The position numbers were made by a program, and so were the translations under genes. Under the pieces are notes generated by a model. It saw nothing but the letters and a program-made list of their open reading frames with translations. It searched no databases and was not told the DNA's origin. Below, piece after piece: positions 1-62,630 of a stretch of 64,000 nt of DNA. The stretch is from Podarcis gaigeae. Its lineage: Eukaryota. The stretch lies in assembly GCA_964106915.2 (NCBI GenBank), contig OZ066920.1; one strand, given 5' to 3'. The number at the start of each line of letters is the position of its first letter. Position 1 is the stretch's first letter.

Positions 1-315
1 TACCCCTTTTGCTGGGATGCTTGCCTAGAGCTTTTCCTCATGATACGGTTTATCTTCCATTACATTTAAGAATAAAAATCAGTCGAGTAAGAATATATTC
101 CCAAGGAATCCATGCAGCATATCTTTCCCCCTGTGCTAATTTATATCAGCTGTATTGCATACAATGCTCGCTCCACAACTGGTTCATTTTAATTTCTGTA
201 TTATTGTATTCAACGTTGCTTTCAATCCCCCCCACCAGAAAAAGTGAAAATAAAATAAACATTCTCACTGTCAGGAACAGATATTTTCTCTTAGGAAGGA
301 GGTAATGTCCTAGGG

Positions 316-443
316 CAGGTGTGGGGAAACATTGGCCCTCCAGATATTGCTGAACCACAACTCCCTTCAGCCTCAGCAAGCATGGTCAATAGCCAGAGAT
401 GATGGGAGTTGTAGTTCAGCAACATCTGGGCTCCCTACACCTG
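316..443. mobile_element. Short hAT-type MITE (ACTACAACTCCC family)
   Basis: CAGGTGT...ACACCTG termini, internal palindrome, 8-bp TSD TCCTAGGG/TCCTAGGA. Confidence 0.75.
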
Positions 444-2415: not shown

Positions 2416-2554
2416 CAGGAGTAGTCAATGTGGTTGTCCTTCAGAAGTTGTTGAACTACAACTTCCATCAGCCCCAGCAAGTGTGACAAATGGTCAAGGA
2501 TGCTGGAAGTTGTTGTTCAATAACATTTGGAGGGTACCACATTGGCTACCCCTG
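2416..2554. mobile_element. Short hAT-type MITE (same family)
   Basis: CAGG...CCTG termini, internal palindrome, degenerate 8-bp TSD. Confidence 0.7.
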
Positions 2555-3131
2555 CTTTAAAGCCATTTCCAAACACCATTTTTTGTTAAAGACTGTTTCC
2601 AAAGAGAGGTGAAAAATACATATCATAGGAGTTTGGAGTAACTGGTGCTGGGAAAATACACCAGTTGTTATGTACACAGAGATAGGAATGAAGATTCTGA
2701 TTGACATCTGAAGCAGCAGTGATTAGAATGTATATGGCTGCTGTTGGATCTCTAGCTTGCCAGATTCTAACATGCTGAATTAGCATGCCAGTCACCTATC
2801 ACAGAACCACAATCATAGAAATCAGAACTCCTGTCCTGCATATGGAGTGCTTCATGTAAATACTTTTATCAAGGTTGTTTTTATTCTGCATTCCTGGATA
2901 TCACCAGTATCTTCCTCAACTCCAGATACTTATTTCTCCGTTCCTGTGGGCCAACTTTGACAGGTAGGCAGGACTGTCTACCTGTCAAATCATCAGGTCT
3001 CCTAATGATAGCAGGTGACTGACACCTGTCCAAGTTCAGAGGAGGTTGCTAGAACTGCTGATCAACAGTTATAGGAAGGACCTTTGAAGTCTCTGAGAAA
3101 GCATTTTGAATTCAAAGCATTTCCTCTAGTG

Positions 3132-3269
3132 CAGTGGTTCTCAACCTGTGGGTCCCCAGATGCTGTTGGACTACAACTACCATCATTCCTGAGCTCTGGC
3201 CTTGCTAGCTAGGGGTGATGGGAATTGTAGTTCAACAACATCTGGGGACCCACAGGTTGAGAAAGGCTG
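3132..3269. mobile_element. Short hAT-type MITE (same family)
   Basis: Palindromic, with a perfect 8-bp TSD CTCTAGTG (3124-3131 / 3270-3277). Further decayed copies at about 1367-1497, 10205-10335, 28510-28640, 43260-43395, 54308-54441 and 57845-57915. Confidence 0.85.
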
Positions 3270-4337
3270 CTCTAGTGCTTTACATCCCATGGGAAACTCC
3301 TTAGGACAGCCCCAACTATCAGCTGACTGTCAACAATGCAGGGCTCTCTTGAAGCAGTAACAAACAGCTGATAGCCAGAGCTTCAAAGTGCCTTGCAAAT
3401 GGTTTTGCAGACACCATCAATCATCTGATCAGCAGTGCCTGAAAACTTTTTTTTTTGGCCCAGCCACTCTGATGTCATATATGATGTCAGATGCAGGGCC
3501 AGTGGGCAGGGCTTAGCCAAAATGGCCTAGTGGGTCTCATTAGGCCTAAGGACTAGAAATTTCTCACCCTTGACTTACAGGGTCCCTGAAAAGACTGCTG
3601 AGAGATGAACTTCCTACTTCTTCAAATGGCAATTTCTTTAATTTGTAGAAATGTAGCTTTCCTACATTTTTGACCGTGCTTCCCTACTTCTTAAAAGGAG
3701 CACATTGCAGCTGCCACATAATACATATCTAAGTTATGGAAAAATCAAGGCATGGCTATGTGAAACAGTTAAAGGAAACAATTCAAAGCACCTTTGTTCC
3801 ACCTTGTCTCACACAGGCTATCAGATTTCATAATTCATAACTGTAATTCCTGCAGGAAAGCATTGCCTTCGTGTGAACTGAGGCATGTATTTCAGAAAAT
3901 CTCAATTTTGAGAGAACTGGTAAGATAAATAATTTGAAATCTGCTTCCATATTGGAGCATGTCAATTTCTACTTTCCTTTCTTTACCTTTTAGATATTTA
4001 ACTGTTTCACTGGTCAAAACAGAGCAGAATCATTCAGCTCTAGCCTCCTGGTATACTGAAGACTCACTAAACTGAAATTTAAAAAAACACACACCAATAT
4101 TTCAGAATGCTATACTATGATGCTAAGCAAAAATGGAAAAAAGATCCAGCGTTTCCCATTACTTTTCAGTATCATGAAGCTACGTTATGCTTAAATCCAT
4201 AATACAATTGGATAGTTTAATAAGCAGCATTTCTAGAGAACACATGAAGAGGCCTCCCTCCATTTGCCTTCAAACCAGGATGAACAGTAGGTCACCAAGA
4301 ACAAAGGATATTATCTACAGAGCACACAAATACTTAC

Positions 4338-4462
4338 ACAATATGAGCCAAGTTTAGAGGTTTTTCAGGCTGGTCAGGGAACATTGGGTGCAAAGGTTCA
4401 CGGCTGGAAGCACAGCTTAAAGACTTGCTAAGTGCATTAGTTAGCTTCTTAGCAGGTGATTT
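4338..4462 (-). CDS. DTNA: DTNA coding exon 8 ([42 protein letters not shown]); gene continues past the left edge
   Basis: 125 nt, cctcccag| acceptor, |gtaagt donor; in frame after exon 7. Not present in the ORF track. Confidence 0.97.
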
Positions 4463-5468
4463 CTGGGAGGAACAAGGAAGGTAAAGGTAATTTGGACAGG
4501 TAAGGTTTAAATTGTTTTTGCAACCACAGAACTATGGGGAAACAAAGCAATGCTCTACTAGTTAAAGGCATCTCCCCCCACCAAAGACCCACTTATTCAG
4601 TGGCTCTGTATTATGTCCTGAGTTGCATCCTCATGAGGCCGGAGGAACATCGCCTGGCTATTGTTTTACTGTTTTATTGATTTAATATGCTGTATACTGC
4701 TTTGAGATTTTTTATTAAAAATATAAAGAGGTATAGAAATAAAATAAAATAATTAATTAAATAAAATCCTTTAAAGAGAGAGAAGCTGCAGAATCTCCCA
4801 GTTCATCTTTCTCCTTTCTCCCACAGTGAGAGGAGTGGGAGAGAGGACCCAAGACCTGCATCTGATCTCTCCACTGGCACAATCCCAGGTGAAAACTACA
4901 TCTGAAAAGCTGCTGATGACATAATTAGAAGTGGAAGAGAGCAAACATTTCTATGACTGAAAAGACCATGTTTGCCCTAAAAGGATTAGGGACAACAAAC
5001 AGATATGTATAGAGAACATACACTTCCTTTAGTAGCCTATCAAGGGTATAAATGAGGTTTTTTCCAGTAAAGGAACCAATACCTGAGTGTATGATCCCCA
5101 GGCAGAATTTTCTACCCATGAACAAAGGCAGGATCAGATACAGTTTGTTTTCTAATTGTGCAGACCTTTGCATAAACTGGGTTTCTAAGGTACACATCAT
5201 CAGTACAAAAGCTGTGTGATAAACATCAGCACAACACTCAATCAAACCAGACTCACACACAAAAAAAATCTAGATTGAAAAATAAAATAATTACGGTGAA
5301 TCATACTTCATTCAGGCCCTCTTTACTCAGTTCAGTCCTTAATAATTTAAACACTTAAAACATGGTGATCCATGCCAAAGAAGTGAGAGTTCAGAGGCCA
5401 TTACTAGAATAATATTTTCCATATTCCTGATTCACTACTTAACTCTGCACTACCTATCTTCATTTATT

Positions 5469-19305: not shown

Positions 19306-19656
19306 AAAAGGTAAAGGACCCCTGACAGTTAAGTCAAGTCGCGAACGACTCTGGGGTTGCGGCGCTCATCTCGCTTTCTTGGCTGAGGGAGCCGGCGTAC
19401 AGCTTCCGGGTCATGTGGCCAATATGACTAAGCTGCTTCTGGCAAACCAGAGCAGTGCACGGAAACGCCGTTTACCTTCCCGCTGGAGTGGTACCTATTT
19501 ATCTACTTGGACTTTGACGTGCTTTAGAACTGCTAGGTTGGCAGGAGCAGGGACCGAGCAATGGGAGCTCACCCCGTCATGGGGATTCGAACCACCAACC
19601 TTCTGATCGGCAATCCCAAGGCTCAGTGGTTTAGACCACAGCGCCACCCATGTCTC
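19306..19656 (-). mobile_element. Sauria SINE (Squam1)
   Basis: tRNA-like head with GGTTCGAATCC B-box on the minus strand, ACCTTT tail, degenerate TSD (agaatcc..tatata); highly similar to the copies at 26.0 and 34.7 kb. Confidence 0.92.
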
Positions 19657-25150: not shown

Positions 25151-25419
25151 TCTGAACAGCCTAATGATACAAAAAGTGAAACATTAATATATAGGAAAGA
25201 CATGAATAATAGAACCAAGACACTAACTGACCAAGCAGAAATGAAAGAAGAGAAGTGCCATTCTGAACTTGAGTTAACCAGACATTAAGTTTCTGTAGCC
25301 CAACCAGTAAAACTGCATTCTGAAAAGTAACCAGCATTAGGGTCTGAAGAAGCAGTAAAAACTACAAGGTTACTGGGGGATTTGGTTGATGTTTTGTTTG
25401 CTACTAAACCAACTCAATA

Positions 25420-25661
25420 CAGTGGTACTTCAGGTTACATACGCTTCAGGTTACGTACGCTTCAGGTTACAGACTCCGCTAACCCAGAAATAATGCTTCA
25501 GGTTAAGAACTTTGCTTCAGGATGAGAACAGAATTCGTGCTTCCGCGGTGTGGCGGGAGCGGGAGGCCCCATTAGCTAAAGTGATGCTTCAGGTTAAGAA
25601 CAGTTTCAGGTTAAGAACGGACCTCCAGAACAAATTAAGTACTTAACCTGAGATACCACTG
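25420..25661 (+). mobile_element. Tc1/mariner-pogo-type MITE (TIR CAGTGGTACCTCGGGTTA, TA TSD)
   Basis: TA|CAGTGGTAC...TACCACTG|TA with internal GCTTCAGGTTA repeats; one of five related copies. Confidence 0.88.
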
Positions 25662-26014
25662 TATACTCAAATCACACTGTTCCACTGGGCTACATCTTTT
25701 TGGGTAGGGTCAGTCTTTTTGAAATTGACACCTGTCCATTATGGGTTGTAGACATCATTATGCTCAGCTGCATATATACCACTTAATTACTGTTACAGTA
25801 CATTATCAATAACATATTTAATTTTATCTGGCAAACCTAGCCAACCCACATTCAGAAAATGTATGTGATTTAAAGGAATATATTGAAGTAACTAGAATAA
25901 ATGTAAACTTGGCTGCAGATTATATGGTAGTCAAATAATGTTTGTAAAGCTGTAAGTCCCTAACAGTTCAATGCGAACCATGTTTTCTAAGAAGTTCAAC
26001 TGACTTTAAAGATA

Positions 26015-26366
26015 AAGTAAAGGTAAAGGGACCCCTGACCATTAGGTCCAGTCGTGACCGACTCTGGGGTTGTGGCGCTCATCTTGCTTTATTGGCTGAG
26101 GGAGCCGGCGTACAGCTACAGTCATGTGGCCAGAATGACTAAGCCGCTTCTGGCGAACCAGAGCAGCGCACGGAAACACCGTTTAGCTTTCCGCTGGAGC
26201 TGTACCTATTTATCTACTTGCACTTTGTGCTTTCGAACTGCTAGGTTGGCAGGAGCAGGGATCGAGCAATGGGAGCTCACCTCACCCCGTCGCGGGGATT
26301 CAAACCGCCGACCTTCTGATCAGCAAGTACTAGGCTCTGTGGTTTAACCCACAGCACCACCCGCGT
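26015..26366 (-). mobile_element. Sauria SINE (Squam1)
   Basis: Full length, ACCTTT tail, 11-bp TSD CTTTAAAGATA (26004-26014 / 26367-26377). Confidence 0.93.
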
Positions 26367-29111
26367 CTTTAAAGATACTTACTTCCAGATAAATATGTTT
26401 AGAGTTACACTGCATCATTCTCTACTGATACTTCACCCATCCATCCCCATTCCCTGACTAATACTAGAATCCAATGTTTATTGCCTCAGTAGCACCTCAG
26501 CAAAATTGTATGCTGCATCATCAAATGCACTGGATGACAGTAGCAAGCAATAGAATAGAGGAACAGTTTCGGTTAACACAAAATTATCTTGGGCTATCAG
26601 CAATAAATGGAAATAATATAAATTAGAAAAGCAAGAAATAAATGGGATTTGGGTAAAATATTATGCACACTGAAATTTATATATAAGTTTATACTCTGTT
26701 GGAACACGGCAACAGCAATTTTAGATGATGTTCCCTGAACCCCTAGGTGGAGTAAGAGTCTGGGTATCTTAAACAGATATTTTTAATCTTACACAATGTG
26801 AAGATGATTTGCAAATCCAAAACAAAGACATTTTCAGGGAAGAGAGGAAAATGAGATTATTTGATGGTCACAAAAACAGAGGCATAGTAAATAAATGAAA
26901 GAACTAGGTAATCAGAGAACAGGATGGCATTACACTCTGGTCCTAGTTAAAAGAAATTACTACTGATGTCATTATACTGTAAGGGTGACGCTAGATTATA
27001 ACTTTTAAAGTATGGTGGAACTTAGAACAGGAATGCCACAAATCCTCACCACCTGCCACACAACTTAGCCCCCATCGCCTTGGATTTATGCTCATTTAAT
27101 TTGACTGCATCTCTTTAGCAACAAAAGACAAAGAACTGATTTTGCAAGAAATGCGGGTAAATTGGAGAACAAGGATCCTGTCCTATCGTGAGCAGAGTGC
27201 AAGTGATGTAAATGTTATTTGCCTCAGAACTGCATAGGATTGAACCACACCTAGGAAACTGGTTTAAAAAGCATAGGCTGCAAATCCATATTGGAACTTC
27301 ATTTTTGCATCCTAGTCTAACACTCTGATTCTAGTTCCTTTGCTGCTGGCTTGCTGATATAATAGCCACTGATGTGAGGCTGGCCCAGAGCACGATGTGT
27401 TTAAAAATATCTGAAGTGAGTACATCTTTAATAGCACTTGCATTTAATTTACAGATGTGAATTATTGTTCATTAGACAGGGTGGGACACAAGGCTAACAT
27501 AAAGTGACAGGCAGAAGAGAAAGAGGCCCCGAGGTATGTAAGAAATTGAAGCTGACTAGCCTACATGCCTCTGAGGCCTAGCTACTATTTGAACTGAGCA
27601 GAAGAGTATGAGGAAGAGAAGGATTAGAGTTGGGGAAGGCGTGGAAGTTAACAAGGTCGCCTCCGCGGTCATCACACTACGCCATTCCCCATGAAAACAG
27701 CTGTATTGTTCTCCTGATGAGACACAGCAAAAAGTATTTCATTCAAAAGAGAACAGAGGAGAAAAATAACACTGAAACCCCCAAGGTGCCAAATTAAAAA
27801 CCATCAGGGATATGAACTCCCGGTTTGTCAGCTCTAATTAAACCCCATATTAGAATCATCAGCCTGGCTTTAAATCCAAGGTTTTCAACTGCCAACTGTT
27901 TATTCTGATCTAGGGAAATCAGCAGCCTTGCTTTTTCAACAGCCAGCACTGGAGAATAACTATGCAGCACAATGAGTAAGGCCCACCAAGGATGGTGGTT
28001 GTTTTTCCAGCCGTACAGTACTGTTTAATTGTATAATGGAGTTTTGATTATGGTATGTTGTTAGGCTCTGCCTCCGCTGCTGTGGTCCACAGAGAGATCA
28101 TATGTGTGCTTGAGATTTCATCATCCTAAATGCTTTTTAATAACTGCTACAAGTAATAAAATACGAAAAGCCGTAGTTTTCAGCAAATGAAACATTTTAT
28201 GCTGAGGAAGAAGGTATTTCTGGAAATCCAGAATTCTGGTGTTCATACAGTGCTTCAGGCTATAGAAGCTGACACTTCCCATTTTCAACTCAGTTCTGTT
28301 GTTCATGATCCTGCTATCTTAGCACCTACACTACTGAACCCTAACTGTTCTCTACTGAAGTTTTGACATGTGTTTCTATAACCATGGAATGGCATCTACG
28401 GCTTGCTTCAACTACCTATCCATTAAACCTAAGCTGCATGACCAACCTCAAATACTGCAGTAAAATTATATTGTGATGATTGTGTATTTCCTAGATTTGT
28501 TATATTTCACGTGTTGGGAACTTTGACACTCCAGATGTTGCTGAACTACAATTTCCATGAGCCTCAACAAGTATGGCCAATGGGCAGAGATGATGGCAGT
28601 TGTAGTTCAGCAACATCTGGAGGGCCAAAGATTAACCATACATGTTATATTTATACCAATGTATTAGCTGACATTGGCTCTCACTTTGCTCATCTCCTTG
28701 GATGTGCAGGAGCAACTAACCATGGCATAGTGGCATTTGATAATTGACCTAGTGGTACATTTCAACTGGACATTATGGTTGGTTTTGCTCACAGCAAATT
28801 ATGATGTCAAGTCAAGGCTTATTAGCTCTGGTTTGTCTGAGCAAAACAAACCATGATCCCTGGTTCAGACATAACATTGAACCAGTAAAGTGTGTGTCAT
28901 TTTAGGGGGTGAAACTTAATTTTTGCAGATTTCTTCAATGAGTGGTCTTTAAAATATGCTTTTGGGTGTGAGGAATTCAAATTTGCTGTTGTTTTTGTGA
29001 CTGGACAACTTAGCTTGCTAAGTCTAATTGATAAGGAAGCACATAAACTGCTTTTGGAAAACCAAAGAATTTTAAATTTACCTTCTGAAAAATGCAAGGC
29101 AATGTGATATT

Positions 29112-34670: not shown

Positions 34671-35034
34671 AAGGTAAAGGTAAAGGTAAAGGGACCCCTG
34701 ACCATTAGATCCAGTCATGACCGACTCTGGGGTTGCGGCGCTCATCTTGCTTTATTGGCTGAGGGAGCCGGTGTACAGCTTCCGGGTCATGTGGCCAGCA
34801 TGACTAAGCCGCTTCTGGCGAACCAGAGCAGTGCATGGAAACGCCGTTTTACCTTCCTGCCGGAGCAGTACCTATTTATCTAATTGCACTTTGAGGTGCT
34901 TTCGAACTGCTAGGTTGGCAGGAGCAGGGACAGAGCAATGGGAGCTCACCCCATCGCGGGGATTCGAACCGCCGACCTTCTGATCGGCAAGTCCTAGGCT
35001 CTGTGGTTTAACCCACAGCGCCACCCGCATCCCT
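34671..35034 (-). mobile_element. Sauria SINE (Squam1)
   Basis: Full length, (ACCTTT)n tail, 13-bp TSD TTAGTTGAAGTTA (34658-34670 / 35035-35047). Confidence 0.94.
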
Positions 35035-36301
35035 TTAGTTGAAGTTAGGTCCCATTTAATTCTAACCTCAGCCAACTTTGTCTGGATCCAACCCATTGCA
35101 ACATTTATTTAAACATAGTACTGTCAGCTTCAGGCCCTTGTGGTCCTTGTTCCTAGAAGGTAAAGGTAGCTTTACTCTGTAAAGCAACCAACATATTGGC
35201 ATCTAATCTGGCAAAAGAGGAGAGACCCCCTTGATTAGCAGTCAGCTCATCAAGAATCTCAGCTTCTGAAGCTCTCTACTTCTCGAGAGCTTCTTTGGTT
35301 AACTATAAAGCAGTTTTTTAATGTATGTTTATAATCACCAACATTTGCAATCACCCTAAATCCAACTTGTATTATCCAGTTTTATACATCATGGTTCTGT
35401 AAAGACCTGCTGGATTGAACTATATAGCCAAGGTTGCCTCACGCTCTCTGGTAGAGACCATTTTGAATGGAGAAAAAGTGATAAAGCTTCACTTTTCTCC
35501 TAATATAAGTGAGTACAATGAAGAGACTATTGGCTTTGACTTGAAAGACGTGCATATGACTTCCACAGTGGAAATATAGGCTAGGTTCTGACTTTTCACT
35601 ATATTTCAGCTTCAATTGCTCATTTGTGAAATGGAAATAATCATGATCAACTTCACACGTCTGATACAAAAACCAACACAAGGTTTACAAAACAGTTTAC
35701 ACACTAGGATGACAATGCTCAGCATATTTATTTGAAATTAAAGTTGCATCGAGGGGTTGGCACTTGTCATTCCTCAGTGGCAGAAAGCATTTCTAATCAG
35801 GACAGTGTTAACATACTTTAATTAAGAAAATGAAAACCGAGACACTTTAGTAAAGCTAGGAAGATTTCAGTCTAGGGCTCAAAAGTACAGGGCATCCACA
35901 GTAAAGAGGATCACCAAATATGCTTGACATTTGATGCTGTAAATGAGAGCCAGTGCTTATGATTGCTCACACTCCTTTTCCTCTCCAAGCCCTCTCCCCC
36001 CACCCTCTCAAATCTCCTCACCTTGGATCTCTTAGCAGTAACTGATATGGTAGAAAACCAGCTTTTAAATAATCCACAGAACTACAAAAAGACAGCATTA
36101 GGTCAATTAAGTACACATTCTTGCAACTTGCCTCACACTAAAAGCACTTTTAAAGCACTTTAAAGCCACTGTTTTGCAGAACAACTGCCTATTTGCCCAA
36201 GGCACAAATCCATACAATATTTACCAAAGTTACATTCTGTCTTGCTGGTCTTTTGCAAGAAAAAATTCATCTACTGGGGGAAAGAATGCCACAGTACTTA
36301 C

Positions 36302-36368
36302 GCATTTCTGCAAACAGCTGTCTCCTTTCTGCCATGGTGGTTCCTCTTTTCCCACAGTCTTCAATCAT
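36302..36368 (-). CDS. DTNA: Alpha-dystrobrevin, first coding exon (MIEDCGKRGTTMAERRQLFAEM-R); the exon is 36302-36369 including 1 nt of 5' UTR
   Basis: Translation matches the dystrobrevin-alpha N-terminus. Acceptor ttgtctag|A-ATG, donor |gtaagt; 67 coding nt, phase 1. Not present in the ORF track. Confidence 0.97.
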
Positions 36369-36772
36369 TCTAGACAACAAAAATATTAAACATATCTTCA
36401 GAATCATTCATAAGCTGAACACATTTGCAAAAATGTCTGAAATGTTCCAGTGTACTATTTCCCCCCTGTTATATATCCAAAGAACACTGGGGATATCTTT
36501 GTCAACAATGTATGATTTAGATTTTGCCCTCAAGCACCTCCTTTCTTCTAGCATTGTCTCTTCCAAAGAATAATGTTTGGTTCTGTTTGAAAGTATCAGT
36601 GCCAACTTTTAAACATACCATTTCATCATTTTCCTCAGGGTGCCTCTTGTTTTAAGATGAACTGCTAAACCCTTTTCACAGGCAGTCAATGTGAAATACT
36701 GCATTTGAGTTGTCCCTACTAGGCTTTTTACCATGGGTTGATGTCTATTTTAAACAGATAATATTTTTTCTA

Positions 36773-37012
36773 CAGTGGTACCTCGGGTTACAAACACTTT
36801 GGGTTACAAACACTTCGGTTACAAACTCCACTAATCCGGAAGTAGTACCTCGGGTTGGGATCTTTGGCCTAGGATGAGAATGGAAATCGCGTGCCAGTGG
36901 TGCGTCAACAGCAGAAGGCCCCATTAGCGAAAGCGCGCCTCAAATAAATAACAGTTTTGGGTTAAGGACAGACCTCCAGAACGAATTAAGTTCGTAACCT
37001 GAGGTATCACTG
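36773..37012 (+). mobile_element. Tc1/mariner-pogo-type MITE, related subfamily
   Basis: Same TIR and internal GGCCCCATTAGC segment; internal repeat unit differs (TTACAAACACTT). Confidence 0.85.
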
Positions 37013-38384
37013 TTTTATAAAAATGTGAGGAAATTTGAAAACCATACAGTCTTGAAAAAGGGCAAGCTTCCTTTGTGGTGACCATTATAGCAAGAATGAC
37101 TGGACAGAACACATTGCTGTATGTTGAAATTTGCTGACCACATGGACTTAAGACAGGGGTTGAGGAACCTCTGAGTCAAAGGCCAGTCTTGGCCTCCCCA
37201 ATTCTGGTAAGGATCTGGTTCACAGAGCCAAAAATGTTCCCCACTTGACTTAAGAAAACATGAACAGAAAATTATACTGCAGCTGGCTTCAGCTCTTGCA
37301 ACTATCTTATCTAGAAGAAACTCCAGAAGGATATTAAGGATGTAACATTTTTATGTTTATGCCTCCCAGTAGCAGATTGGTGCAGATAAAATAAATTCTG
37401 ATACAAATAGATGATGCTGTACTCATTTTAGCAAAGTCATGTCTCCTTATTTCTGACCTGAATACAAGCTGGTGAAGAGGAGGTTAAGTTACTGTGTTGG
37501 GTGAAACCACATTTGCAAAGTTACCAAGTTCAGCAATCCTTGAAGCTAATAGCTGAAATGGAGAAAGGTTATTGCAGAGCCCTACTCGCCTTAATGGATT
37601 TACAGCTGCATCGTGAATCCCTTGTTACATTTCTTCTAATAAAACATTTCTCTAGCAGCAGTACATTTCTCAGCTATACATTTCAGCATTTCAGCACTAA
37701 TCTTTGGCAATATCATAAAATTGCTGCCTGCTCTTTCCTAAGGCTACTTATAATTGCAATGCACTTATAGCATTTGTTTGCACTCATGTAGATGAACTAC
37801 CTATGGTTTTGTGAGGGGGGGAGAGCTGTTAATCCACACCAAGTATAACAACTCAGTAACTGACTCCTCATGTTTTGCCTTGTTTTTCAAATATCTACAT
37901 CTTACAAAAAATGAAATTTCATCTTCATGATTCATCTGTTCTATCAAAATAATATAGAGACAATCCCAGCAGGTTCTTTCCATTATACACACTCTTCCAG
38001 AGATTCTGTAAGATTTGAAGATTGGATTGAAAATAATGCTTTGACCTACTTGTGTTGCTGGTAATAAAAGCAGCATTTATTTTTATTTCACTATAAACTA
38101 TTTTATGTCAAATTCACATGTACCCAATCACAGGTCTATCACGTCCCATTTTAAGGTATTTTTTTTCTTTTACAGAAGGTCACACTGAAATTCTACACAT
38201 TTGATAGGCTTTTTACATACATTCTTAGTGTATTCCATGCATTTTCCTTAAAATAAGCATTTCTGTGCACATGTCTTAAACCTGAAACTGCACTGCAAAA
38301 TTCTGAGAAGTACATGATCCGATTGATTCTGATCTGCATCTGAAACTGGGACTGGTAAATAGGCCTATTCTCTTTGGACCAAGT

Positions 38385-40824: not shown

Positions 40825-41186
40825 GGGACGCAGGTGGCACTGTGGGTTAAAGCCTCAGCGCCTAGGACTTGCCGATCGAAAGGTCGGCGGTTCGAATCCC
40901 TGCGGCGGGGTGCGCTCCCGCTGCTCGGTCCCAGCGCCTGCCAACCTAGCAGTTCGAAAGCACCTCCGGGTGCAAGTAGATAAATAGGGACCGCTTACCA
41001 GCGGGAAGGTAAACAGCGTTTCCGTGTGCGGCTCTGGCTCGCCAGATGCAGCTTTGTCACACTGGCCACGTGACCCAGAAGTGTCTCCAGACAGCGCTGC
41101 CCCCTGGCCTCTTGAGTGAGATGGGCGCACAACCCCAGAGTCTGTCAAGACTGGCCCATACGGGCAGGGGTACCTTTACCTTTACC
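40825..41186 (+). mobile_element. Sauria SINE (Squam1), a different subfamily
   Basis: GGGACGCAGGTGGCACTGTGGGTTAAA head, GGTTCGAATCC B-box, (ACCTTT)n tail, TSD TTTAGGGGCCAGGC (40804-40817 / 41187-41200); CpG-rich, suggesting a young copy. Confidence 0.93.
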
Positions 41187-44100
41187 TTTAGGGGCCAGGC
41201 AGTGACGTTTCTCTTCTCTGAGACCTTTTAGCATCCTTCTACTATATTTTAATGTTCGCTAAATTTTATTTAATATTAGTCTCTGCCACACAAACATCAA
41301 TTAGATGGATTCAGCTTATGTGTGGGTGTTTTAGCTCTTTCTAATTGCTGAATTGATTTTTTCCCCCTGGGGATGATATTTATTTCTATGGTAGGCTAGA
41401 TTGTTAGTGTGAACTGTGGTTTTTGTGTTTTGATGTGTTTTGATGTTTGTCTAATACTTGTGTAGTGCATTGCCTAGAGACAGTTGCCTAGAGATTTGCA
41501 GGAGGCGACTGACAAACGAACATGACAACTAAATAACAAATAAAATGAGCAATTAAAAAACTCCATTCACATAGCTCTCACTGAAGAGATTAATGAGGTG
41601 AAGCCACAAAAAAATAATTTTTTCTCCATAGTGATTAGTTCTAAGACTGCTCTTTAACACTGTAGACAGAGCCACATATCATAGCTCCAATGTTAATGGA
41701 AAACACACGTCAGTGATTCTATAGTTGTGATCCTTGCTTTGCAGGGAGCTAGACTAGATGATCCTTTGGGTCCCTTCCTACAATTCTGTGAAAACCTGCT
41801 TGAGCCAGAAGGTTGGTGGGCTACTACAACAGCTCAGACTGGAAGCCCTGGCTTATATTGAAGCAGAGTGCAAGTCCATTTTCCAATCTTGGAACTTTTC
41901 CAATCTTGGAACTTTCATCCACTCCACTGACACAATTCCTACCTTGTATTGGGGAATCAAGGGTCCTTGATGAAGATGACAGTGGCTTAGATCATGGATG
42001 GCAAAAGCTGCTTCCAGCCTCCCACCGGCCCTTCTCATGCCCCCAACTTCCTGCAAAGGGCCTCCAAATTTCATCTTGTTCTTCCAGTGCAAAGAGGTTG
42101 GATAGTGATGTATGGATTCTTGCAGTGACTGTACCAACAGAGCTCACAGTACTAGGATGTTGACCACTTAGGAAACCCATTTTTTTTTAAAGGGAGGGCA
42201 TACAGTTTCAGAAAGTTAAAAAGTTATCTTATAAACAGGCACTGTGTATTGAAAGAAAATCTAACCATCAAGTCTCTAATTCTTGTGAAGAAAGCTGGTT
42301 TTTTAAAAAATTGAGTGATGAATAGAAGCCAAAATTAGTATGTGGCTACTGAGGCATAATTTGATATTAATAAAAATGAATGTTGTGCACAGAATTCTGT
42401 TGGAACACAAGTACAAAGCAGAGAAACAAAGTGCTAAATTAATGCAATTTTTAAATCTCTTTCTTCTTCTCACCTACCTATGTGTTTGCTGAGCTATGTT
42501 GTACTTTAAACATTTCATCCTAGAACAGGAGTGGCTGACCCAGTGGGGCAGAGCCATAGCAACAGCCTCTTAGCAGCACAATTGCTGCCATTTACCAGAA
42601 GGCATGGGGCTACATCAGACTCAGAGTTGTACAGGTACATCAGTAAGAACTGGTGCTGGGGGTGGGGGCTATGCTGCAGCTCTGCCTCACACAGCGAGCC
42701 ACTCCTGCCCTAGAATATTCCATTAAATTAACTGAATAACTCTTCTTTATGCTCATCACATGATACTGGTTTATCTTCTCAACATATTCTACTACAGCAG
42801 GTTAATATAAACTCCTTCATTATAAAGCCAACTTTGATACAAACCTATGCTGTTTTTCGCCCCAGAGAAAATCCAGCTTGTTCGCTATCTAGCTGATAAA
42901 AAATACATCACCATAGATCAGACATTTAATTTGCTGTCCATGATTAATATAGAGCTGGAAACTTATTACAGGGAATATGCAAAAATAATTAACCAAGAAC
43001 ATATTTGACATCATTTATTTATTTTCTTACATTTATATCCCTCACAGAACCCAAGAAGGCACATGTGAGGTCTATAGGAGGCCTCCCATAATCTATGCTC
43101 ACTGGAACTCTCAAGGAGGTCAACAGCAGTGTGACACAATGCTCACTTTGCACATTAACCTTCTAGGTTAAGAGTAACTTGCCTGAAAGAAACCAAAATT
43201 TGGGTGCCAGAACTACTATGAGCTCCTCAAAAAGCTTGTGTGAAAACTATTTGCATTAGGGCACCCAGTTTGACCTGCAGATATTGCTGGACTGCTCCTC
43301 CCATCATCCACTGGTCACAGTGGTTGGAATGGAGGGGGACTGAAGGTCTGAAGGACTGAAGGTCCAACAATATCTGGAGGACCATAGGCTCCCTTCCTTT
43401 CTACACATTGTGTACTTTGATTTCCTGAGCTATTTTTCTTCTGCTCAGCAGTGCAGTGGGGAATTTGGATTGGGCTTTCAGTACAGGTCTTGAGTAACCC
43501 TTCCCTTCCAGCTGATTTTCCAAAGCAAGTCACCTCACATTGCTATGAGCAGTGGAGTGGAAAAAATACATGACACGGCCAGGATGAAAAGAGGTCAAAA
43601 CAGGCTGGTGGTTAAGTTCTGGAGTAGACAAATAAGGATCCAAAAGGTGGATGAAGTGGTCTGATAGGTCAGTAGTCAGGCCCCTTACCTCCATATTAAC
43701 CTGTTCTGATGCAGCTTGGGGCTCATAGAGGAAGCATAAGCAATAAAAAGGTGAAGCAGGTTAAGCTAGGTGCAGACAAAGGTCTCTAGTAGGCCCAGCT
43801 GTCTGTGCTTTGGAAGTTTCTATCTAAGCCAAGAGCTGAGGTCATATGAGGATTTATGTAGGCTGGCAAGGTCAATACTGCAGTTGGCTCAAAATGTCTA
43901 AACTGTGGATGGGATGAAGGTATTATTGAGGGCTCATCCTCTAAATCTGAGGAAGTCAGGAGAGGTATGTCTCAGGCCAGGAGGGTCTAGGAAGAGGTGC
44001 TGAGGGTATTCCCTTCAAGTGAAGCAGCCTGTATTTTCTTCTCATTTGTGTGTCCCTCAAGGTAGTATGAGGGGGTCGTTTTCCTCTCAGAGTCTTAACA

Positions 44101-45715: not shown

Positions 45716-46753
45716 ATAATGCGTATTGTATTGTGATGCAGACTACCATGCATATAGAAATATGGTGGAACTGAGTGCAGTAACAGAGTGGTGGGGCAGC
45801 AGCCCTCATGTGACCTTCTGACAGCTGAGCTGCTTCTGCTGTCTGGGAAGGAGAGGGGAGGAGGCAGTTGGTGCAGTGATAATGCACCAGTATAACAGAA
45901 GGACTGACTCTGCCTTTGAATCTGCACCACTGACTTCCCCTTCCCCTCCTGATAAGAAATAGTGACTCAGCTGTTGGGAGGTCAGGTGAGTGCTGCCACC
46001 AGCGTACAGCCCACTACTGATTAAATGTACATCTAAAGCCTTCCTTTCTTGCTCAGTATTGTTGGCAACAGGCTAGAAAAGATTAAGGGGAATATGTATT
46101 CCTATAAATCCTGCTCTCTTGGGATGATAAAGTAGGTATTTCTAAAACAAATCCAAAGCTGACATGAGCTTATATAGTCCCAATATTGTCACATTATTTT
46201 ACACCATTTGAGAATCTGTCTGGAAACCTCACAGTCATCTGAAGCTGTTTTAATGGCCATTGAACACATACATGTCTCTCATTCCAAGCATCTTCTCCCC
46301 TCCCCTCCTTCCTTGATCTTTCCCCCTCTTTTCTGTACTTTCTGTTTCTCTCTCATGTTGCCCCTTTCAACTGCTTTGTTCTTCCAGCCACACCTAGTTG
46401 TGCTGTGACAAATCATACTGCTTTCTGATGTCTTTCACTTCACAATTTGCTTTGTAGGTAAAGAACAAAGGAGCAAAATGGTGAACTCAGCTGGGCTCTA
46501 GACACCATGCCCTGATCACTTCTTTCATTGCTCAATGTGCCCCGCAGGCTGCAAACTGAAACTGACCAAAGAGGTAGTGAACTTGCAGTTCACAGGTGTT
46601 GCGAACAAACTGTTCAACACACCACTGAAAGATACCAGCAAGAAGATATGCAGCAGTCTCAGCAGTGAGCAACATCACTGGAAAAAGTCTAGAAAAAGGC
46701 AGCCATCTGAACAAACATCAGGTAGTAGTTTTCTTGGTCAGATTTAATAGTTA

Positions 46754-46984
46754 CAGTGGTACCTTGGGTTACATATGCTTCAGGTTACATACGCTTCAGG
46801 TTACAGAGTCCACTAACCTAAAGGGTTAAGAACTTTGCTTCAGGATGAGAACAGAAATCGTGCTTCGGCGGCACGGCAGCAACAGGAGGCCCCATTAGCT
46901 AAAGTGGTGCTTCAGCTTAGGAACAGTTTCAGGTTAAGAACGCATCTCCTGAATGAATTAAGTACTTAACCCGAGGTACCACTG
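46754..46984 (+). mobile_element. Tc1/mariner-pogo-type MITE
   Basis: TA-flanked TIRs CAGTGGTACCT..GGGTTA / TAACCCGAGGTACCACTG. Confidence 0.9.
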
Positions 46985-47189
46985 TATTTATTTATAAAAC
47001 TGGTTTTATAAAACTGGTTTTATACCTTTTTCCATAAAGAGCACCAAGATGGCGTGCACTAGATACAAAAACAATATAAGCAATACAAACACAAAAGGGT
47101 AATATTATGCAACAACAGAAACAATGCTATACTCATGGACAGCAGTAGGCAGCACTGTCTGTTAAGTTTTGCAGGAAAATGGCACACCC

Positions 47190-50300: not shown

Positions 50301-50419
50301 GGTATGAGAACTCTTATATCAGTGAAAGCTAATAGTTCAGCTAGTGGTTACAACATTTCCAAGGACTGTTAACCATGGTATTCTTCACAGGTAAGACATG
50401 CTATATTTGATTCCAAGTA

Positions 50420-50644
50420 CAGTGGTACCTCTGGTTACATACTTAATTTGTTCCGGAGGTCCGTTCTTAACCTGAAGCACCACTTTAGCTAATGGGGCCT
50501 CCTGCTGCTGCTGTGCTGCCAGAGCCCGATTTCTGTTCTCATCCTGAAGCAAAGTTCTTAACCCGAGGTACTATTTTGGGGTTAGCAGAGTCTGCAACCT
50601 GAAGCGTATGTAACCTGAGGCGTATGTAACCTGAGGTACCACTG
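50420..50644 (-). mobile_element. Tc1/mariner-pogo-type MITE (opposite orientation)
   Basis: TA-flanked TIRs; interior is the reverse complement of the 46.8-kb copy. Confidence 0.9.
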
Positions 50645-50914
50645 TATGTAAATGTTGCTTCTGTTTTAGAACCACCTTCCTGGTCTTTTTTTTGTTGTAT
50701 GACTAAGATTTTGCCTTTCTTTTCCATAGTGGTAAAATTTCAAAGTCCCATTTCCCAGTCTTCAAATCATATTTGAGAGATTGGGAACATGCTGTAGGCT
50801 CATTTGCATTGCCCTTCCTCCCCTCTTGCAAAACCTTCCCTTTTATCATTTGTGATAACTATAATTTGACATTAACATCTGAATCAGGTTAACTATGGTT
50901 AGGGACAATCAGGG

Positions 50915-57473: not shown

Positions 57474-58480
57474 AAAACAGCCCTCTAGATGATGATCACG
57501 TCAAACAGTACAGTGGTAGATCAAATACAGTGGTAGATCAAATATAAATAACCATTGTAGCCAAGATGGCTACTCTATATTGTAACTACCAGAAGTTATA
57601 ATACAAGATTCTTTAAAAACGAACAAACACATGTTGAGATATATATTTTTTGGTATAGTCAAATGAAATGGTTTTTATGTTGTATAGCCAACAGAAAAAC
57701 CAACAGTGAAAAACAATTACAGAGCTCATGTCACATTATTTGCAAAGGACTGGGGTATGGGTGACCAGAAATAATCCAATTATGATCTGCCTTTGGTAAA
57801 GTAATACAAGATTCTTCCATAGCAACCTTAGCCCCTTCATTGCCCTCCATTTGCCCCAGCTGCTGGGAAGTGGTAGTCCAAAACATATGGAGGGCAATGG
57901 TTGTTCTACCCCCTCAGGGGTTGCCAACATTTTTGAGCCTGTGTGCACATTTGAAAACAGATGAGAACCACACATATACTGCAAACAAGCACACAACACA
58001 ACCTATTATAGTAACTACAAGAGGATGCTTCTTTCAAAGTCTAATTTCAGTGAGGCAAGGGGACACTGTGGGCACCAGGGGAGGCCTCTGCAGGGTCTTG
58101 TGCACCCGGGGGGGGGGCATATTGGCAGCCTCCTGTTTTATGGAGAATCCATAACGTAACATATAATTGGGCATGAGCCCCCCATGCTAAGAAAATAGAT
58201 AGGTGGCACAAATTCAATGTTAAAAAACAGAATTAATTGACAGTGATTATTGTCAGGGCTGAATTTCTGAAATAATATTCAGTTTTCAGACTGCTCATCT
58301 TCCAGATTTGGTTCCTATACTGAAGACACAAAAATGATGAGTCTAGGGGAGAAAATAAGGAGACCTCCCCTTGTGTGAGCCACTGGACTTGCTGAATTAG
58401 CATGTGTGGCAAGGGATACCTGCAAAACACTTTGCAATCAGTGCTCATATTCTGCAACAGATGGCTCACCAATTTTAACA

Positions 58481-58717
58481 TAAAAATTCCTTCCAGTAGC
58501 ACCTTAAAGACCAACTAAGTTAGTTCTTAGTATGAGCTTTCGTGTGCATGCACACTTCTTCAGATACACACTTCTTCATGACAGATTTACCCAAATCTGT
58601 GTGCATGCACACGAAAGCTCATACTAAGAACTAACTTAGTTGGTCTTTAAGGTGCTACTGGAAGGAATTTTTTTGTTTTGACTATGGCAGACCAACACGG
58701 CTACCTATCTGTAACTA
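58481..58717 (+). mobile_element. Penelope-like retroelement terminal fragment with 5' inversion (fold-back), copy 1
   Basis: Perfect 74-bp inverted arms (58482-58555 / 58599-58672), 3' tail ACTATGGCAGACCAACACGGCTACCTATCTGTAAC shared with copy 2, 11-bp TSD CAATTTTAACA (58470-58480 / 58718-58728), embedded hammerhead motif. Confidence 0.8.
58530..58567 (-). ncRNA. Minimal type I hammerhead ribozyme motif (DTNA sense strand)
   Basis: GUAU-CUGAAGA-A-GUGUGCAUGCACAC-GAAA-GC-UC^AUAC: both core boxes present, stem I GUAU/AUAC, hairpin stem II, palindromic AGCU in place of stem III. Confidence 0.7.
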
Positions 58718-60192
58718 CAATTTTAACAGCGCAGCTATAATTTCTTGGACAAAATAATCACTTTCTGATCCAAACAACTCAAATATTTACTTAACATTTC
58801 CATATCTACCTTTAACAACAATACACAATTGCAAGATGTATACAACTAATAGAATAAAGAACCTCCCAAAATAACAAAGCTTCCTCAGGCCAAGAAAACG
58901 TTGTACTGCAATCCATGTCTATCGTACAGAGTTCAGTATGGCTTACTCCCAAGTAAGTGGGTATAAGACTGCAGCCTACATGAATTCTGGCTCTCTTGTG
59001 AAAAGCTTATTCATAAATCCTTTGATTAAGACTGTCAGTGGACTTATACACACAAGTTGCAAGCAAAGTACATTTCCCAAGGAAGTCACATGATTAATTT
59101 TATTGCCTTTCATGTCTACATTTAATGAGGTCAAGAAAACAGAAAATGCAAATATAAAAATATTTTTAAAGCCTAGGAGAATATGAAAAGAAGGTCACCT
59201 GTGTCAACAGCAAAAAAAAAAGTCTACAGATGTTTTGCATAGCAGTATTTATTGTTGTTTTGCAAAACAAAGCATGGGGGTGCAGAATGAGACGTGTTTT
59301 GCAAATACTCAGTACAACACAAAACTTCCATATTTTGCAAATTAGGGTGCAGGGTGGCTATTCAAGGTAGAAGCAAAGCTCCAAATGTAGCACCTGCTAA
59401 CTCTCTACAGATGGTCTGATAAGGAAAAGATGAATAGAGCTACTGCTTGAATAATTTATGCCTATTCTAGTATGCAAGGAGTAAAAACTGACTTAGGTGT
59501 CTTTTATGGGAGTTTGGCAGGCCTTTCCCTTATCAAGACTGCATTTTAGTAAACCAAAATAGTAAGTATGTTGATCTAAATAATTCAACCTAATTCAATT
59601 CAGCCGTATTCAAGATGAAAATAATTTCCCCAATTTAAGGTAGAAGCATTCCTTGTTTGTTTGTTTTTTAAAAAAGAAAGCATGTCATTAACGTATCCTT
59701 AAAACAGTGAAGTTAAACTATATACAGTAACAATCTTAGAAAGGGTATTTGTTTCTTATGCAATGTTATTTGATGGTTTTGTGATGCAAAATACAGCAAG
59801 ATTAAGAAAACAGAGTTTTGTCTGCTGGCTGTCAGAATGTGACTCAATGGGCGTTTTATTCCTAATGATTAATTCTTAGCAACTTTGGAGCCTGCATATC
59901 CTTTCACCAATAGAGGTTGATCCAACAAAAGCTAGCAGCTTTTCTGGATCTAGAACCAACAAGCAAAATGTATCAAAAATAGCATTGCACTGTGCAAAGC
60001 ACAGTACATTCCTGGTCATAAAATGATGAACTGGCTTTGCAGTTAGCAATCTCTAATTAGAATAGAAATTTTGCTGCGGTGAGGTTATGCAAGAATACCT
60101 TGTAAGGCCACAGGGCAACTGGAATCCCAAAGTGATTAAAATATGGTGATCATTCCCTTATTTACATAACAAAGGGAAAATAAAAAGATGCT

Positions 60193-60452
60193 TTTCTAGG
60201 CTGCATTAACAGAAGTATAGGGTCCAGATCAAAGGAAGTAATGGTACTGCTCTATTCTGTCTTTGTCAGACCACAGCTGGAGTAGTGAGTCCAGTTCTGA
60301 GTGTCACAGTTTAAGAAGAACATTAACAGGCTGGAATGTGTGCAGAGGAGGGTGACCAAGATGATCTAGAGTCTGGAAACTAAGCTTTATGAGGAATGGT
60401 TCAGGAAGTTGGGTATGTTTCTGCAGAAAATGGAGGGCTCTGAGGCAGATGA
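60193..60452 (+). mobile_element. CR1 LINE ORF2 fragment adjoining fold-back copy 2
   Basis: Decayed LGCINRSI...LYS..VRP.LE..VQF...LECVQRRVTKMI motif typical of the CR1 ORF2 region downstream of the RT domain. Confidence 0.8.
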
Positions 60453-60525
60453 GTAACCCATAAGGGATAAAACAAAAAAAAAATCCTTCCAGTAGCACCT
60501 TAAAGACCAACTAAGTTAGTTCTTG

Positions 60526-60563
60526 GTATGAGCTTTCGTGTGCATGCACACTTCTTCAGATAC
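60526..60563 (-). ncRNA. Minimal type I hammerhead ribozyme motif (DTNA sense strand)
   Basis: Identical 38-nt motif in the left arm of fold-back copy 2. Confidence 0.7.
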
Positions 60564-60585
60564 ACAGTGTGTATCTGAAGTGTGT

Positions 60586-60623
60586 GTATCTGAAGAAGTG
60601 TGCATGCACACGAAAGCTCATAC
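60586..60623 (+). ncRNA. Minimal type I hammerhead ribozyme motif (plus strand)
   Basis: GTAT 60586-89, CTGAAGA 60590-96, stem II 60598-611, GAAA 60612-15, predicted cleavage after C60619, ATAC 60620-23. Confidence 0.7.
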
Positions 60624-61215
60624 CAAGAACTAACTTAGTTGGTCTTTAAGGTGCTACTGGAAGGAATTTTTTTTGTTTTGACTATGGCAGACCAACACGG
60701 CTACCTATCTGTAACCATAAGGGATAAGGTTTAGTGGTGACATAACCTAAATAAAGATTTTATAGTTTTATGAAGACTATAATGTGTGTGTGTGCAAAAA
60801 TCTCCACCCTTTCTTTTATTTGCCAGAAAATATAATCAATACATCAATAAAAAACCTTATTGATAAATATTTACATATTTATGTATTTAAATATAGCTTA
60901 TTATTATTAGTGCCTAGGGTAATTCATATATAAATCTGTCAACAACATTTCCCAGATAAAAAGTCACATAAGAGAAATGTAAAGCCTGCTATTAATCTTT
61001 TCCTGTGTAGCTTAAAATACATTAGAAACATATTTCATAGATCCAAATGCAAATGTGACAACAACTACATTGGATATGCTTCCCGTATACAATAATTATC
61101 CATTCCTTATTGGCATACTGCAGTGCTTATGGTGCCAAGTTAGATTAATCTGATTTCTGAAGACGTTCAATATTTTCCATTAGTTTTATTACGCTTTATA
61201 TAAAAAAAAGCCTTC

Positions 61216-61257: not shown

Positions 61258-61614
61258 GTAGCATGAAATGACCTCTAATCCTGAAATAAAATATTGGAAT
61301 GTAACCAACATTTTAGCAAGCATTTTAACATAAATCTGAAAGGCCTGCTTCATTCTATTATTAACACTACTCAAGACAGAATTGGTAATGCAGAGTGTAG
61401 GTGGCCAAAGATGACTCCGAATGTCCAGTTTAAGTACCAAGCACCACTTGAGCCTCCCACCTAGGGTCCCCTGTTGGGCAATAGCTTGACCCGATGTGTG
61501 ATGATTCACAATATGTGATGAGTGATTCTGGTTATAAAGTGAGCTGTGCACTTCTTTTTAAAATGGAACTAGCAAAAGCAACTGGATTTTCTAAGGCAAA
61601 GCCCATTAGCACTA

Positions 61615-61840
61615 CAGTGGTACCTTGGGTTAAGTACTTAATTCGTTCCGGAGGTCCGTTCTTAACCTGAAACTGTTCTTAACCTGAAGCACCACTTTAG
61701 CTAATGGGGCCTCCTGCTGCTGCCACACCGCCGGAGCACAATTTCTGTTCTCATCCTGAAGCAAAGTTCTTAACCTGAAGCACTATTTCTGGGTTAGGGG
61801 CGTCTGTAACCTGAAGCGTATGTAACCCGAGGTACCAGTG
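61615..61840 (-). mobile_element. Tc1/mariner-pogo-type MITE (opposite orientation)
   Basis: TA-flanked TIRs; same family as above. Confidence 0.9.
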
Positions 61841-62630
61841 TAATTTAAAAATGATATGTGATTAATTACTCTCCTTTCCTTGTAATGCTGCTTTCTCAGT
61901 GTCTTCCTTTTCTTTCTTTTTCGATTTTTCTTTTGAGCACAGATACCACCACATAGGTGCCCTTCCAGATATTTTATACTCCTGGGTAGAATATATTCCT
62001 TTGTGCAGCCTTTCCATTAAGGTAATAAACTCGAAACAGGCAGAAAAAGTTTATATTAAGAAAATATAAGTCATTAATTACCTGTCCAAAAATCCCCTGC
62101 TTTATAAAACTGGAATTACTGAAATGCAGCGGATCCTCTCCTCATAAATATCTTTTGGTAATATGCATTTTAATTCATTCAATAAAAGTAAAATCTATTT
62201 TTGTACAATGCCAAAAGGAGAGACATAATGAAATATATGAGCCACTACTGGTCAATGATTAAAATGTGCTCTCATTACTGTGCCCTTCTGCTATTAGCAT
62301 GAGAAATGAGAATAAGATGGTGATGGGGGCATCATGATGAATATAATAATCTCACAAAAAGATTTGTGAGAAGTCTAACGATGGAGACTATGGATAATTA
62401 TAGGGGGTGCAATCCTGCTCAAGCTAAGAATGCTTATATCCTGCCCATTTCAATGGCAAGGTCAATCACATGTTTAACAATGCCTTCCATTCAGTAGGGC
62501 TTATATTTGCTTAACTTCGGTTGGCTTGTACCCAGTATAGAGGGAAGTAAAATACCCCATAACTCTTTTGAGGGTTTCCATTTCTCTCTGTCCCACTCCC
62601 TCTCTTTCTCTCTCTCTTCTCACACACATA

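What the first reader, a model, noticed from the sequence alone, without database searches (positions are those of the whole stretch)
58530..60623. Three intact minimal hammerhead ribozyme motifs in a pair of Penelope-like fold-back insertions 5' of the DTNA coding exons
Seen: the same 38-mer GTAT-CTGAAGA-A-GTGTGCATGCACAC-GAAA-GC-TC-ATAC occurs at 58567-58530 (-), 60563-60526 (-) and 60586-60623 (+). It has the CUGANGA and GAAA boxes, a UC cleavage site, a 4-bp stem I and a hairpin stem II; stem III is replaced by the palindrome AGCU, and there is one extra A after A9. Established: Penelope-like elements carry minimal type I hammerheads with palindromic loop 3 that cleave as dimers, and an extra nucleotide after A9 is tolerated in a natural viroid hammerhead. 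Inference: two copies 2 kb apart on the DTNA sense strand could supply each other's dimer partner within one pre-mRNA started further upstream, giving an intronic self-cleavage device. The motif class is known; this locus arrangement is what merits testing.
Basis: partly seen in the sequence, partly recalled or inferred. Interest (0 to 1): 0.8.

Follow-up and report, generated by a model that had tools for sequence, protein, structure and literature searches.

The report
Hairpin Penelope insertions masking their hammerheads
Two young, broken copies of a very common lizard jumping gene landed 2 kb apart upstream of the dystrobrevin coding exons; they carry real self-cutting RNA motifs, but each motif is predicted to be locked up by its own mirror-image copy, so this is ordinary transposon debris rather than a cutting device for the host gene.

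Summary
The three identical 38-nt minimal hammerhead motifs are real. They lie in two separate fold-back insertions of a Penelope-like element end, each with its own target-site duplication (11 and 13 bp) and a 34-37 nt tail. This inverted layout is already described for Penelope-like elements. The family is very abundant (read depth 2-7 x 10^4 times the flanks, rough), and insertion 1 is absent at the orthologous site in a related species. The proposed 2-kb dimer device is not supported. On either strand the antisense arm is transcribed first and captures the motif in a 74-83 bp perfect duplex. The predicted chance that the motif's own stem II forms is below 1e-15, and forcing the double hammerhead costs about 125 kcal/mol. 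Transcription across the site is plausible but not shown. The scan noted this family before on other DNA of this genome (209 notes mention hammerheads), and a note on this window had already flagged the masking. Verdict: ordinary new copies of a known kind. The most plausible residual effect is an intronic dsRNA hairpin (ADAR or Dicer substrate), which was not tested.

The parts
58470..58480 (.). Insertion 1, left target-site duplication (11 bp)
   Evidence: identical to 58718-58728; only one copy is present in the species-E contig (record 1)
58482..58571 (-). Insertion 1, inverted arm of the Penelope-like element end, no tail
   Evidence: (I8, I13)
58530..58567 (-). Minimal hammerhead motif, DTNA sense; C17 at 58534; masked by its antisense arm
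58572..58598 (.). Insertion 1 centre: short re-copied piece of the hammerhead 5' region plus filler
   Evidence: sequence
58599..58680 (+). Insertion 1 direct arm, 5'-truncated exactly at the start of the stem II palindrome (no CUGAAGA box); it is the antisense mask on the - strand
58681..58717 (+). 37-nt Penelope-type tail; other genomic copies end at 58680 or 58716/58717
   Evidence: loose-end table
58718..58728 (.). Insertion 1, right target-site duplication
60180..60430 (+). Decayed CR1-like LINE fragment just left of insertion 2 (not part of the element; limits approximate)
   Evidence: translation with stops, high read depth; family name from my own knowledge
60458..60470 (.). Insertion 2, left target-site duplication (13 bp)
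   Evidence: identical to 60715-60727
60471..60566 (-). Insertion 2 inverted arm (perfectly complementary from 60484), no tail
   Evidence: (I7)
60526..60563 (-). Minimal hammerhead motif, DTNA sense; C17 at 60530; masked
60567..60582 (+). Insertion 2 centre, 16 nt, a re-copied piece of the hammerhead 5' region
60583..60680 (+). Insertion 2 direct arm
60586..60623 (+). Minimal hammerhead motif, antisense to DTNA; C17 at 60619; masked by the left arm on the + strand
60681..60714 (+). 34-nt tail of insertion 2
60715..60727 (.). Insertion 2, right target-site duplication
36301..36369 (-). First coding exon of DTNA (context; acceptor at 36371-36370, ATG at 36368; low coordinate approximate)
   Evidence: gene identity

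Best explanation
Two independent, recent, heavily 5'-truncated insertions of the 3' end (pLTR) of a very abundant squamate Penelope-like retroelement. Shown: each has a staggered-cut target duplication, a direct arm ending in the tail, and an inverted arm that stops where the tail begins. Inferred: the element's GIY-YIG endonuclease cut AT-rich DNA, reverse transcription started internally at the tail ends, ran about 120-135 nt to the hammerhead region, slipped or folded back there, and the inverted copy was joined to the other target end. The hammerheads are passengers that serve the parent element. In any transcript across these sites the antisense arm comes first and zips the motif into a long perfect duplex, so they are predicted to be catalytically silent. 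Their closeness to each other and to DTNA is chance.
For: TSDs of 11 and 13 bp. Tail of 34-37 nt on one arm only, with other genomic copies ending at the same two points, 58680 and 58716/58717; this matches PMC11167929, PMC8557442 and PMC3846280. Both arms of each insertion share a private T/C variant after the cleavage site, while the two insertions differ. Empty site for insertion 1 in species E, and probably species B. Element depth 2-7 x 10^4 times the flank. Fold-back MFE -164 and -187 kcal/mol. P(own stem II) below 1e-15 at full length and at most 4e-7 at every transcript length tested. Forced dimer +125 kcal/mol.
Against: All folding evidence is from a nearest-neighbour model without proteins, helicases, editing or tertiary/Mg2+ contributions. 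No autonomous partner ORF could be fetched (all blank), so the link to a Penelope-like reverse transcriptase rests on structure and motif, not on protein homology. The presence or absence of insertion 2 in other animals could not be read, because its left flank is repetitive.
Confidence: 0.88

Rival explanations
1. One reading: the two DTNA-sense hammerheads, 2 kb apart, form a double hammerhead through their AGCU palindromes in the pre-mRNA and cut the intron.
For: Both motifs are intact and in DTNA sense. The first coding exon has an acceptor and no promoter-like CpG island lies between 36 and 64 kb, so a transcript probably crosses the site. Dimer cleavage is known for this class (PMC4209133; PMC6765202).
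Against: Antisense arms are transcribed first and mask both motifs; +125 kcal/mol for the forced dimer. Even for free 38-mers the classical dimer (-11.1) is no better than two monomers (2 x -6.8) and far worse than pairing through the 14-nt stem II palindrome (-29 to -30.6). Insertion 1 is absent in a relative. The Anolis element's hammerhead needed protein, and no reads ended at its cut site (PMC11167929).
Confidence: 0.02
2. The insertions matter as RNA, but as 74-83 bp perfect double-stranded hairpins in DTNA pre-mRNA: substrates for ADAR editing or Dicer/Drosha (endogenous siRNAs against the family), with at most a small effect on DTNA processing. This is compatible with the best explanation and adds a consequence.
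For: Perfect arms of 74 and 83 bp; folding z-scores -21 and -23; sub-threshold resemblance to miRNA-hairpin models; family sequence is present in a run guessed to be RNA (X15). That long duplexes are edited or diced is established knowledge.
Against: No stranded, small-RNA or matched DNA/RNA reads were available; no listed holder is on record as RNA. Contigs cannot show editing at one locus of a very high-copy family. Introns are short-lived.
Confidence: 0.25
3. 58470-60727 is one composite unit in which 2 kb of host DNA was carried between element ends, as described for rotifer Penelope elements.
For: Such capture between pLTRs is known (PMC3846280). The outer arms are 99% complementary over 90 nt across 2 kb (I8).
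Against: Each insertion has its own TSD and its own variant. The 2-kb spacer is single-copy and continues into the flank without the element in species E; a single-copy contig in species B also spans 58718-60362.
Confidence: 0.01

Closest known systems
Minimal hammerheads (min-HHR) of metazoan Penelope-like elements (Cervera and de la Pena 2014, PMC4209133)
   Same: Type I core without helix III, extra nucleotide between 9 and 10.1, G10.1-C11.1 pair, palindromic 15/16 region, 4-bp helix I. Thousands of solo copies per genome. Pairs 100-700 bp apart on opposite strands are already reported there, as are motifs in reptiles.
   Different: Helix II is 5 bp here (7-8 bp in the Schistosoma families), and stem II plus its loop is a perfect 14-nt palindrome. 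The opposite-strand pair in insertion 2 is only 22 nt apart.
Truncated, inverted Penelope-like insertions with pLTR, tail and TSD (Arkhipova et al. 2013, PMC3846280; Craig et al. 2021, PMC8557442)
   Same: Inverted 5'-truncated copy next to the direct copy, 30-40 nt tail on one end only, target duplication of similar size (8-10 bp there), palindrome at the inversion junction.
   Different: These copies are reduced to about 240-250 bp with no ORF, so the whole insert is one hairpin.
PAc, the Poseidon element of Anolis carolinensis (Frangieh et al. 2024, PMC11167929)
   Same: Squamate Penelope-like element with a minimal hammerhead; two 3' end points that define the tail; AT-rich targets; templates copied past an uncut hammerhead.
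   Different: In PAc the ORF starts at stem II. Here the ATG in loop II is followed by a stop after 9 codons, so this is probably another family or clade (Neptune-like by my recollection, not tested).
Non-LTR retrozymes (bioRxiv 10.64898/2026.07.22.740005; PMC7229834)
   Same: Small, non-coding, hammerhead-bearing derivatives of Penelope-like elements.
   Different: Retrozymes are head-to-tail tandems whose hammerheads can dimerise. These insertions are inverted, which masks the motif.
Conserved intronic ribozymes of amniotes (CPEB3 HDV-like, PMC10919898; RECK and C10orf118 hammerheads, from my own knowledge)
   Same: Self-cleaving motif in sense orientation in a probable intron.
   Different: Those are single-copy, fast monomers conserved for long periods. 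These are lineage-restricted copies of a high-copy repeat, lacking stem III and masked.

Membership tests
PLE minimal hammerhead (min-HHR) | CUGANGA, GAAA and UH boxes with stems I and II | tested here: met
PLE minimal hammerhead (min-HHR) | Extra nucleotide between 9 and 10.1; G10.1-C11.1 pair; palindromic 15.1-16.1 region | tested here: met
   sequence against the features listed in PMC4209133
PLE minimal hammerhead (min-HHR) | Self-cleavage as a dimer | not testable with these tools
   needs in vitro cleavage; folding predicts no access in the native context
Rfam hammerhead families | Covariance-model hit | tested here: not met
   no hammerhead model among 32 hits up to E 10; expected, as helix III is missing
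Penelope-like element insertion (EN+) | Target-site duplication | tested here: met
   11 and 13 bp; empty site with one copy in species E
Penelope-like element insertion (EN+) | Inverted 5'-truncated copy adjacent to the direct copy | tested here: met
Penelope-like element insertion (EN+) | 30-40 nt tail at one end, two family-wide 3' end points | tested here: met
   37 and 34 nt; loose ends pile at 58680 and 58716/58717
Penelope-like element insertion (EN+) | Linked ORF with telomerase-like RT and GIY-YIG endonuclease; clade (Poseidon or Neptune) | not testable with these tools
   no ORF in these copies; no related contig in viral, metagenome or prokaryote collections
Non-LTR retrozyme | Head-to-tail tandem units each with a hammerhead | tested here: not met
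   copies are inverted or in separate insertions
Host-co-opted intronic ribozyme | Motif able to fold in the native transcript | tested here: not met
   predicted fully sequestered; computational only
Host-co-opted intronic ribozyme | Conserved at the orthologous site across species | tested here: not met
   insertion 1 absent in species E; insertion 2 unresolved
Host-co-opted intronic ribozyme | Transcribed within the host pre-mRNA | tested here: inconclusive
   acceptor before the first coding exon; one 270-nt contig from a run guessed to be RNA lies on 60746-61021; no holder on record as RNA

The most novel reading that the evidence does not exclude
A protein (the element's own ORF product, a helicase) or A-to-I editing opens the fold-back duplexes often enough that the two DTNA-sense hammerheads pair across 2 kb and cut the pre-mRNA. 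This would make hairpin Penelope insertions conditional, editing- or protein-gated cleavage switches in lizard introns.
Probability: 0.02. Interest if true: 0.7.

Novelty: new member of a known kind. Interest (0 to 1): 0.1.

Why it matters
The locus itself matters little: it is two of probably tens of thousands of copies. The analysis does give a general rule for this genome. In inverted Penelope insertions the hammerhead is always transcribed after its own antisense, so fold-back copies are predicted to be self-silencing and should not be read as intronic cleavage devices. Two family-level leads remain open. One is that these hairpins may be a large source of dsRNA in lizard pre-mRNAs. The other is that the palindromic stem II may be where reverse transcription folds back. 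If cleavage in the native RNA were shown, it would be a rare case of a transposon ribozyme acting on a host gene.

Tried and rejected
Rfam scan: no hammerhead model hit, only sub-threshold hits, mostly miRNA-hairpin models; miRNA identity rejected, since any long hairpin scores so. DNA pattern scans of viral, metagenome (two) and prokaryotic genome collections for the element or relatives were all blank, so no autonomous element was obtained and the clade is not assigned. Lunse et al. 2017 on dimer cleavage is not held and is cited only through the review PMC6765202. No paper giving the distance of DTNA 5' non-coding exons was found. A search for a link to crocodilian Chompy repeats gave nothing usable. 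A single composite insertion was rejected (separate TSDs, empty site). The joints cannot prove that fold-back centres cluster at the hammerhead 5' edge, because the reference itself ends there. Read depth is used only as an order-of-magnitude sign of abundance.

Full report
Observation. The 38-mer is present without mismatch at 58567-58530 (-), 60563-60526 (-) and 60586-60623 (+), and never in 100 shuffles. A relaxed minimal-hammerhead descriptor that I wrote finds only these three sites in the window, against a mean of 0.005 in 200 dinucleotide shuffles. The motif has every feature that Cervera and de la Pena list for metazoan Penelope-like minimal hammerheads: the extra base between 9 and 10.1, the G10.1-C11.1 pair and a palindromic 15/16 region (PMC4209133). 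That paper already reports thousands of solo copies per genome, pairs on opposite strands 100-700 bp apart, and motifs in reptiles. Rfam has no matching hammerhead model. The host gene call is right: minus-strand exons match dystrobrevin alpha. The first coding exon begins at 36369, one base before the ATG and after an AG acceptor. The insertions are thus 22-24 kb upstream of it, probably in a 5' intron; that last step is inferred.

Anatomy. There are two separate insertions. Insertion 1 (58481-58717) is flanked by an 11-bp duplication and insertion 2 (60471-60714) by a 13-bp duplication. Each has an inverted arm without the tail, a short centre made of re-copied bits of the hammerhead 5' region, and a direct arm that ends in a tail of 37 or 34 nt. 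The arms are perfectly complementary over 74 and 83 bp. The direct arm of insertion 1 is a fourth, broken copy that begins exactly at the 14-nt palindrome formed by stem II and its loop. One base after the motif is T in both arms of insertion 1 and C in both arms of insertion 2. Each pair of arms therefore came from one template, and the two events came from different templates (inference). An inverted truncated copy, a 30-40 nt one-sided tail, a short duplication and a palindrome at the junction are the described signature of Penelope-like integration (PMC8557442; PMC3846280). The tail marks two internal start points of reverse transcription (PMC11167929). In the public DNA contigs, dozens of other copies diverge from the reference at 58680 and at 58716/58717 in each run (loose ends), which are the two ends of the tail.

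Abundance and age. Summed contig depth over the element is about 2-7 x 10^4 times that of the unique flanks in three DNA runs from three species. The tool warns that this is not a copy number, so I take it only as a sign of very many copies. The scan holds 209 notes with the word hammerhead among 553 noted windows of this genome (unchecked notes, used as a lead only). Assuming a 1.4-Gb genome and random placement, 6-45 copies per Mb give roughly 100-5,000 neighbours within 2 kb, so a close pair needs no special cause. A contig from species E runs from 58469 straight into 58718, an empty site with one copy of the duplication. A species-B contig starts to align only at 58718, which suggests the same. 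A second sample of the source species has contigs entering insertion 1 from both sides. Insertion 2 could not be genotyped because its left flank is a decayed LINE.

Can the motifs work here? Predicted not. The arms point outwards from the centre, so a polymerase crossing either insertion in either direction makes the antisense arm first. The minus-strand RNAs fold into single long duplexes (-164 and -187 kcal/mol). The probability that a motif forms its own stem II is below 1e-15 in the full context, and at most 4e-7 at every transcript length tested from the moment stem II is complete. Freeing one motif costs 43-68 kcal/mol, against 6-13 without the antisense arm. Forcing the classical double hammerhead on the native 2.4-kb RNA costs about 125 kcal/mol, against about 26 when the two antisense arms are deleted. 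Cross-pairing between the two insertions does not help, since there is one antisense arm for each sense motif. Even for naked 38-mers the AGCU-paired dimer (-11.1) is no better than two monomers (-6.8 each) and far weaker than a duplex through the stem II palindrome (-29 to -30.6), which supplies no stem III. These are secondary-structure energies without proteins or tertiary contacts. The literature points the same way. Dimers of this class cleave weakly (PMC4209133). The Anolis element's hammerhead cut only with the element's protein, was not needed for insertion in vitro, and left no read ends at its site (PMC11167929).

Expression. No run that holds the stretch is on record as RNA. One run from another species, guessed to be RNA, holds many family contigs and a 270-nt contig on the flank at 60746-61021. 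This is weak and could be DNA. Transcription across the site is plausible but not shown.

Mechanism. Shown: two independent truncated and inverted insertions with duplications and tails, lineage-restricted in at least one case, from a very abundant family. Inferred: cutting by the element's endonuclease, internal priming at the tail, arrest and slippage or fold-back near the hammerhead (possibly helped by the palindrome, as proposed for rotifer elements in PMC3846280), then joining of the inverted copy. All four arms extend past C17, so the template was uncut or rejoined. Predicted: the motifs are silent in this context; the only likely RNA-level consequence is a double-stranded hairpin, which was not tested.

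Limits. No autonomous partner was found in the searchable collections, so membership rests on structure and motif, and the clade is unassigned.

Verdict. New members of a known kind, interest 0.1.

Noticed in passing
window 60598-60611 (also 58542-58555, 58599-58612, 60538-60551): Stem II plus loop II of the hammerhead is a perfect 14-nt palindrome. Two free copies are predicted to dimerise through it (-29 to -30.6 kcal/mol) rather than through AGCU, and the direct arm of insertion 1 starts exactly at it. It is a candidate self-priming or fold-back point for the family.
   Followed up: partly
window 60586-60633 (+): One frame is open through the whole hammerhead for 15 codons to a stop at 60631-60633, and the T/C difference between the two insertions is at a third codon position. 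This fits the end of the parent ORF overlapping the ribozyme, but it is one site only.
   Followed up: partly
window 58556-58598 and 60560-60597: The centres of both insertions contain 12-14 nt direct re-copies of the hammerhead 5' region at about 16-nt spacing, suggesting reverse transcriptase slippage at the inversion point. Insertion 1 also has a small filler with a 6-bp inverted repeat.
   Followed up: partly
window 60453-60457 versus 60711-60715: The target just left of the insertion 2 duplication reads GTAAC, the same as the end of the element's tail. This may be microhomology at priming, and it makes the duplication length (12-13 bp) ambiguous.
   Followed up: no
window 60180-60430 (+): Decayed CR1-like LINE fragment with several stops, immediately left of insertion 2.
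   Followed up: partly
window 60746-61021: A 270-nt contig from a run guessed to be RNA (another species) lies on this apparently low-copy flank; it could be pre-mRNA, an unannotated non-coding exon or DNA contamination.
   Followed up: no
window 19306-19654, 26019-26367, 34682-35031, 40845-41190; 25418-25671, 36771-37022, 46752-46994, 50415-50647, 61613-61842; 325-429, 3126-3275, 28516-28633: Three other dispersed repeat families: a Sauria-SINE-like repeat and two short inverted-repeat (MITE-like) families, typical of lacertid-like lizard genomes. Names are from my own knowledge and were not tested.
   Followed up: no
window 36001-64000: No CpG island (observed/expected at most 0.37 in 1-kb bins), so a CpG-type DTNA promoter would lie beyond the window end.
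   Followed up: partly
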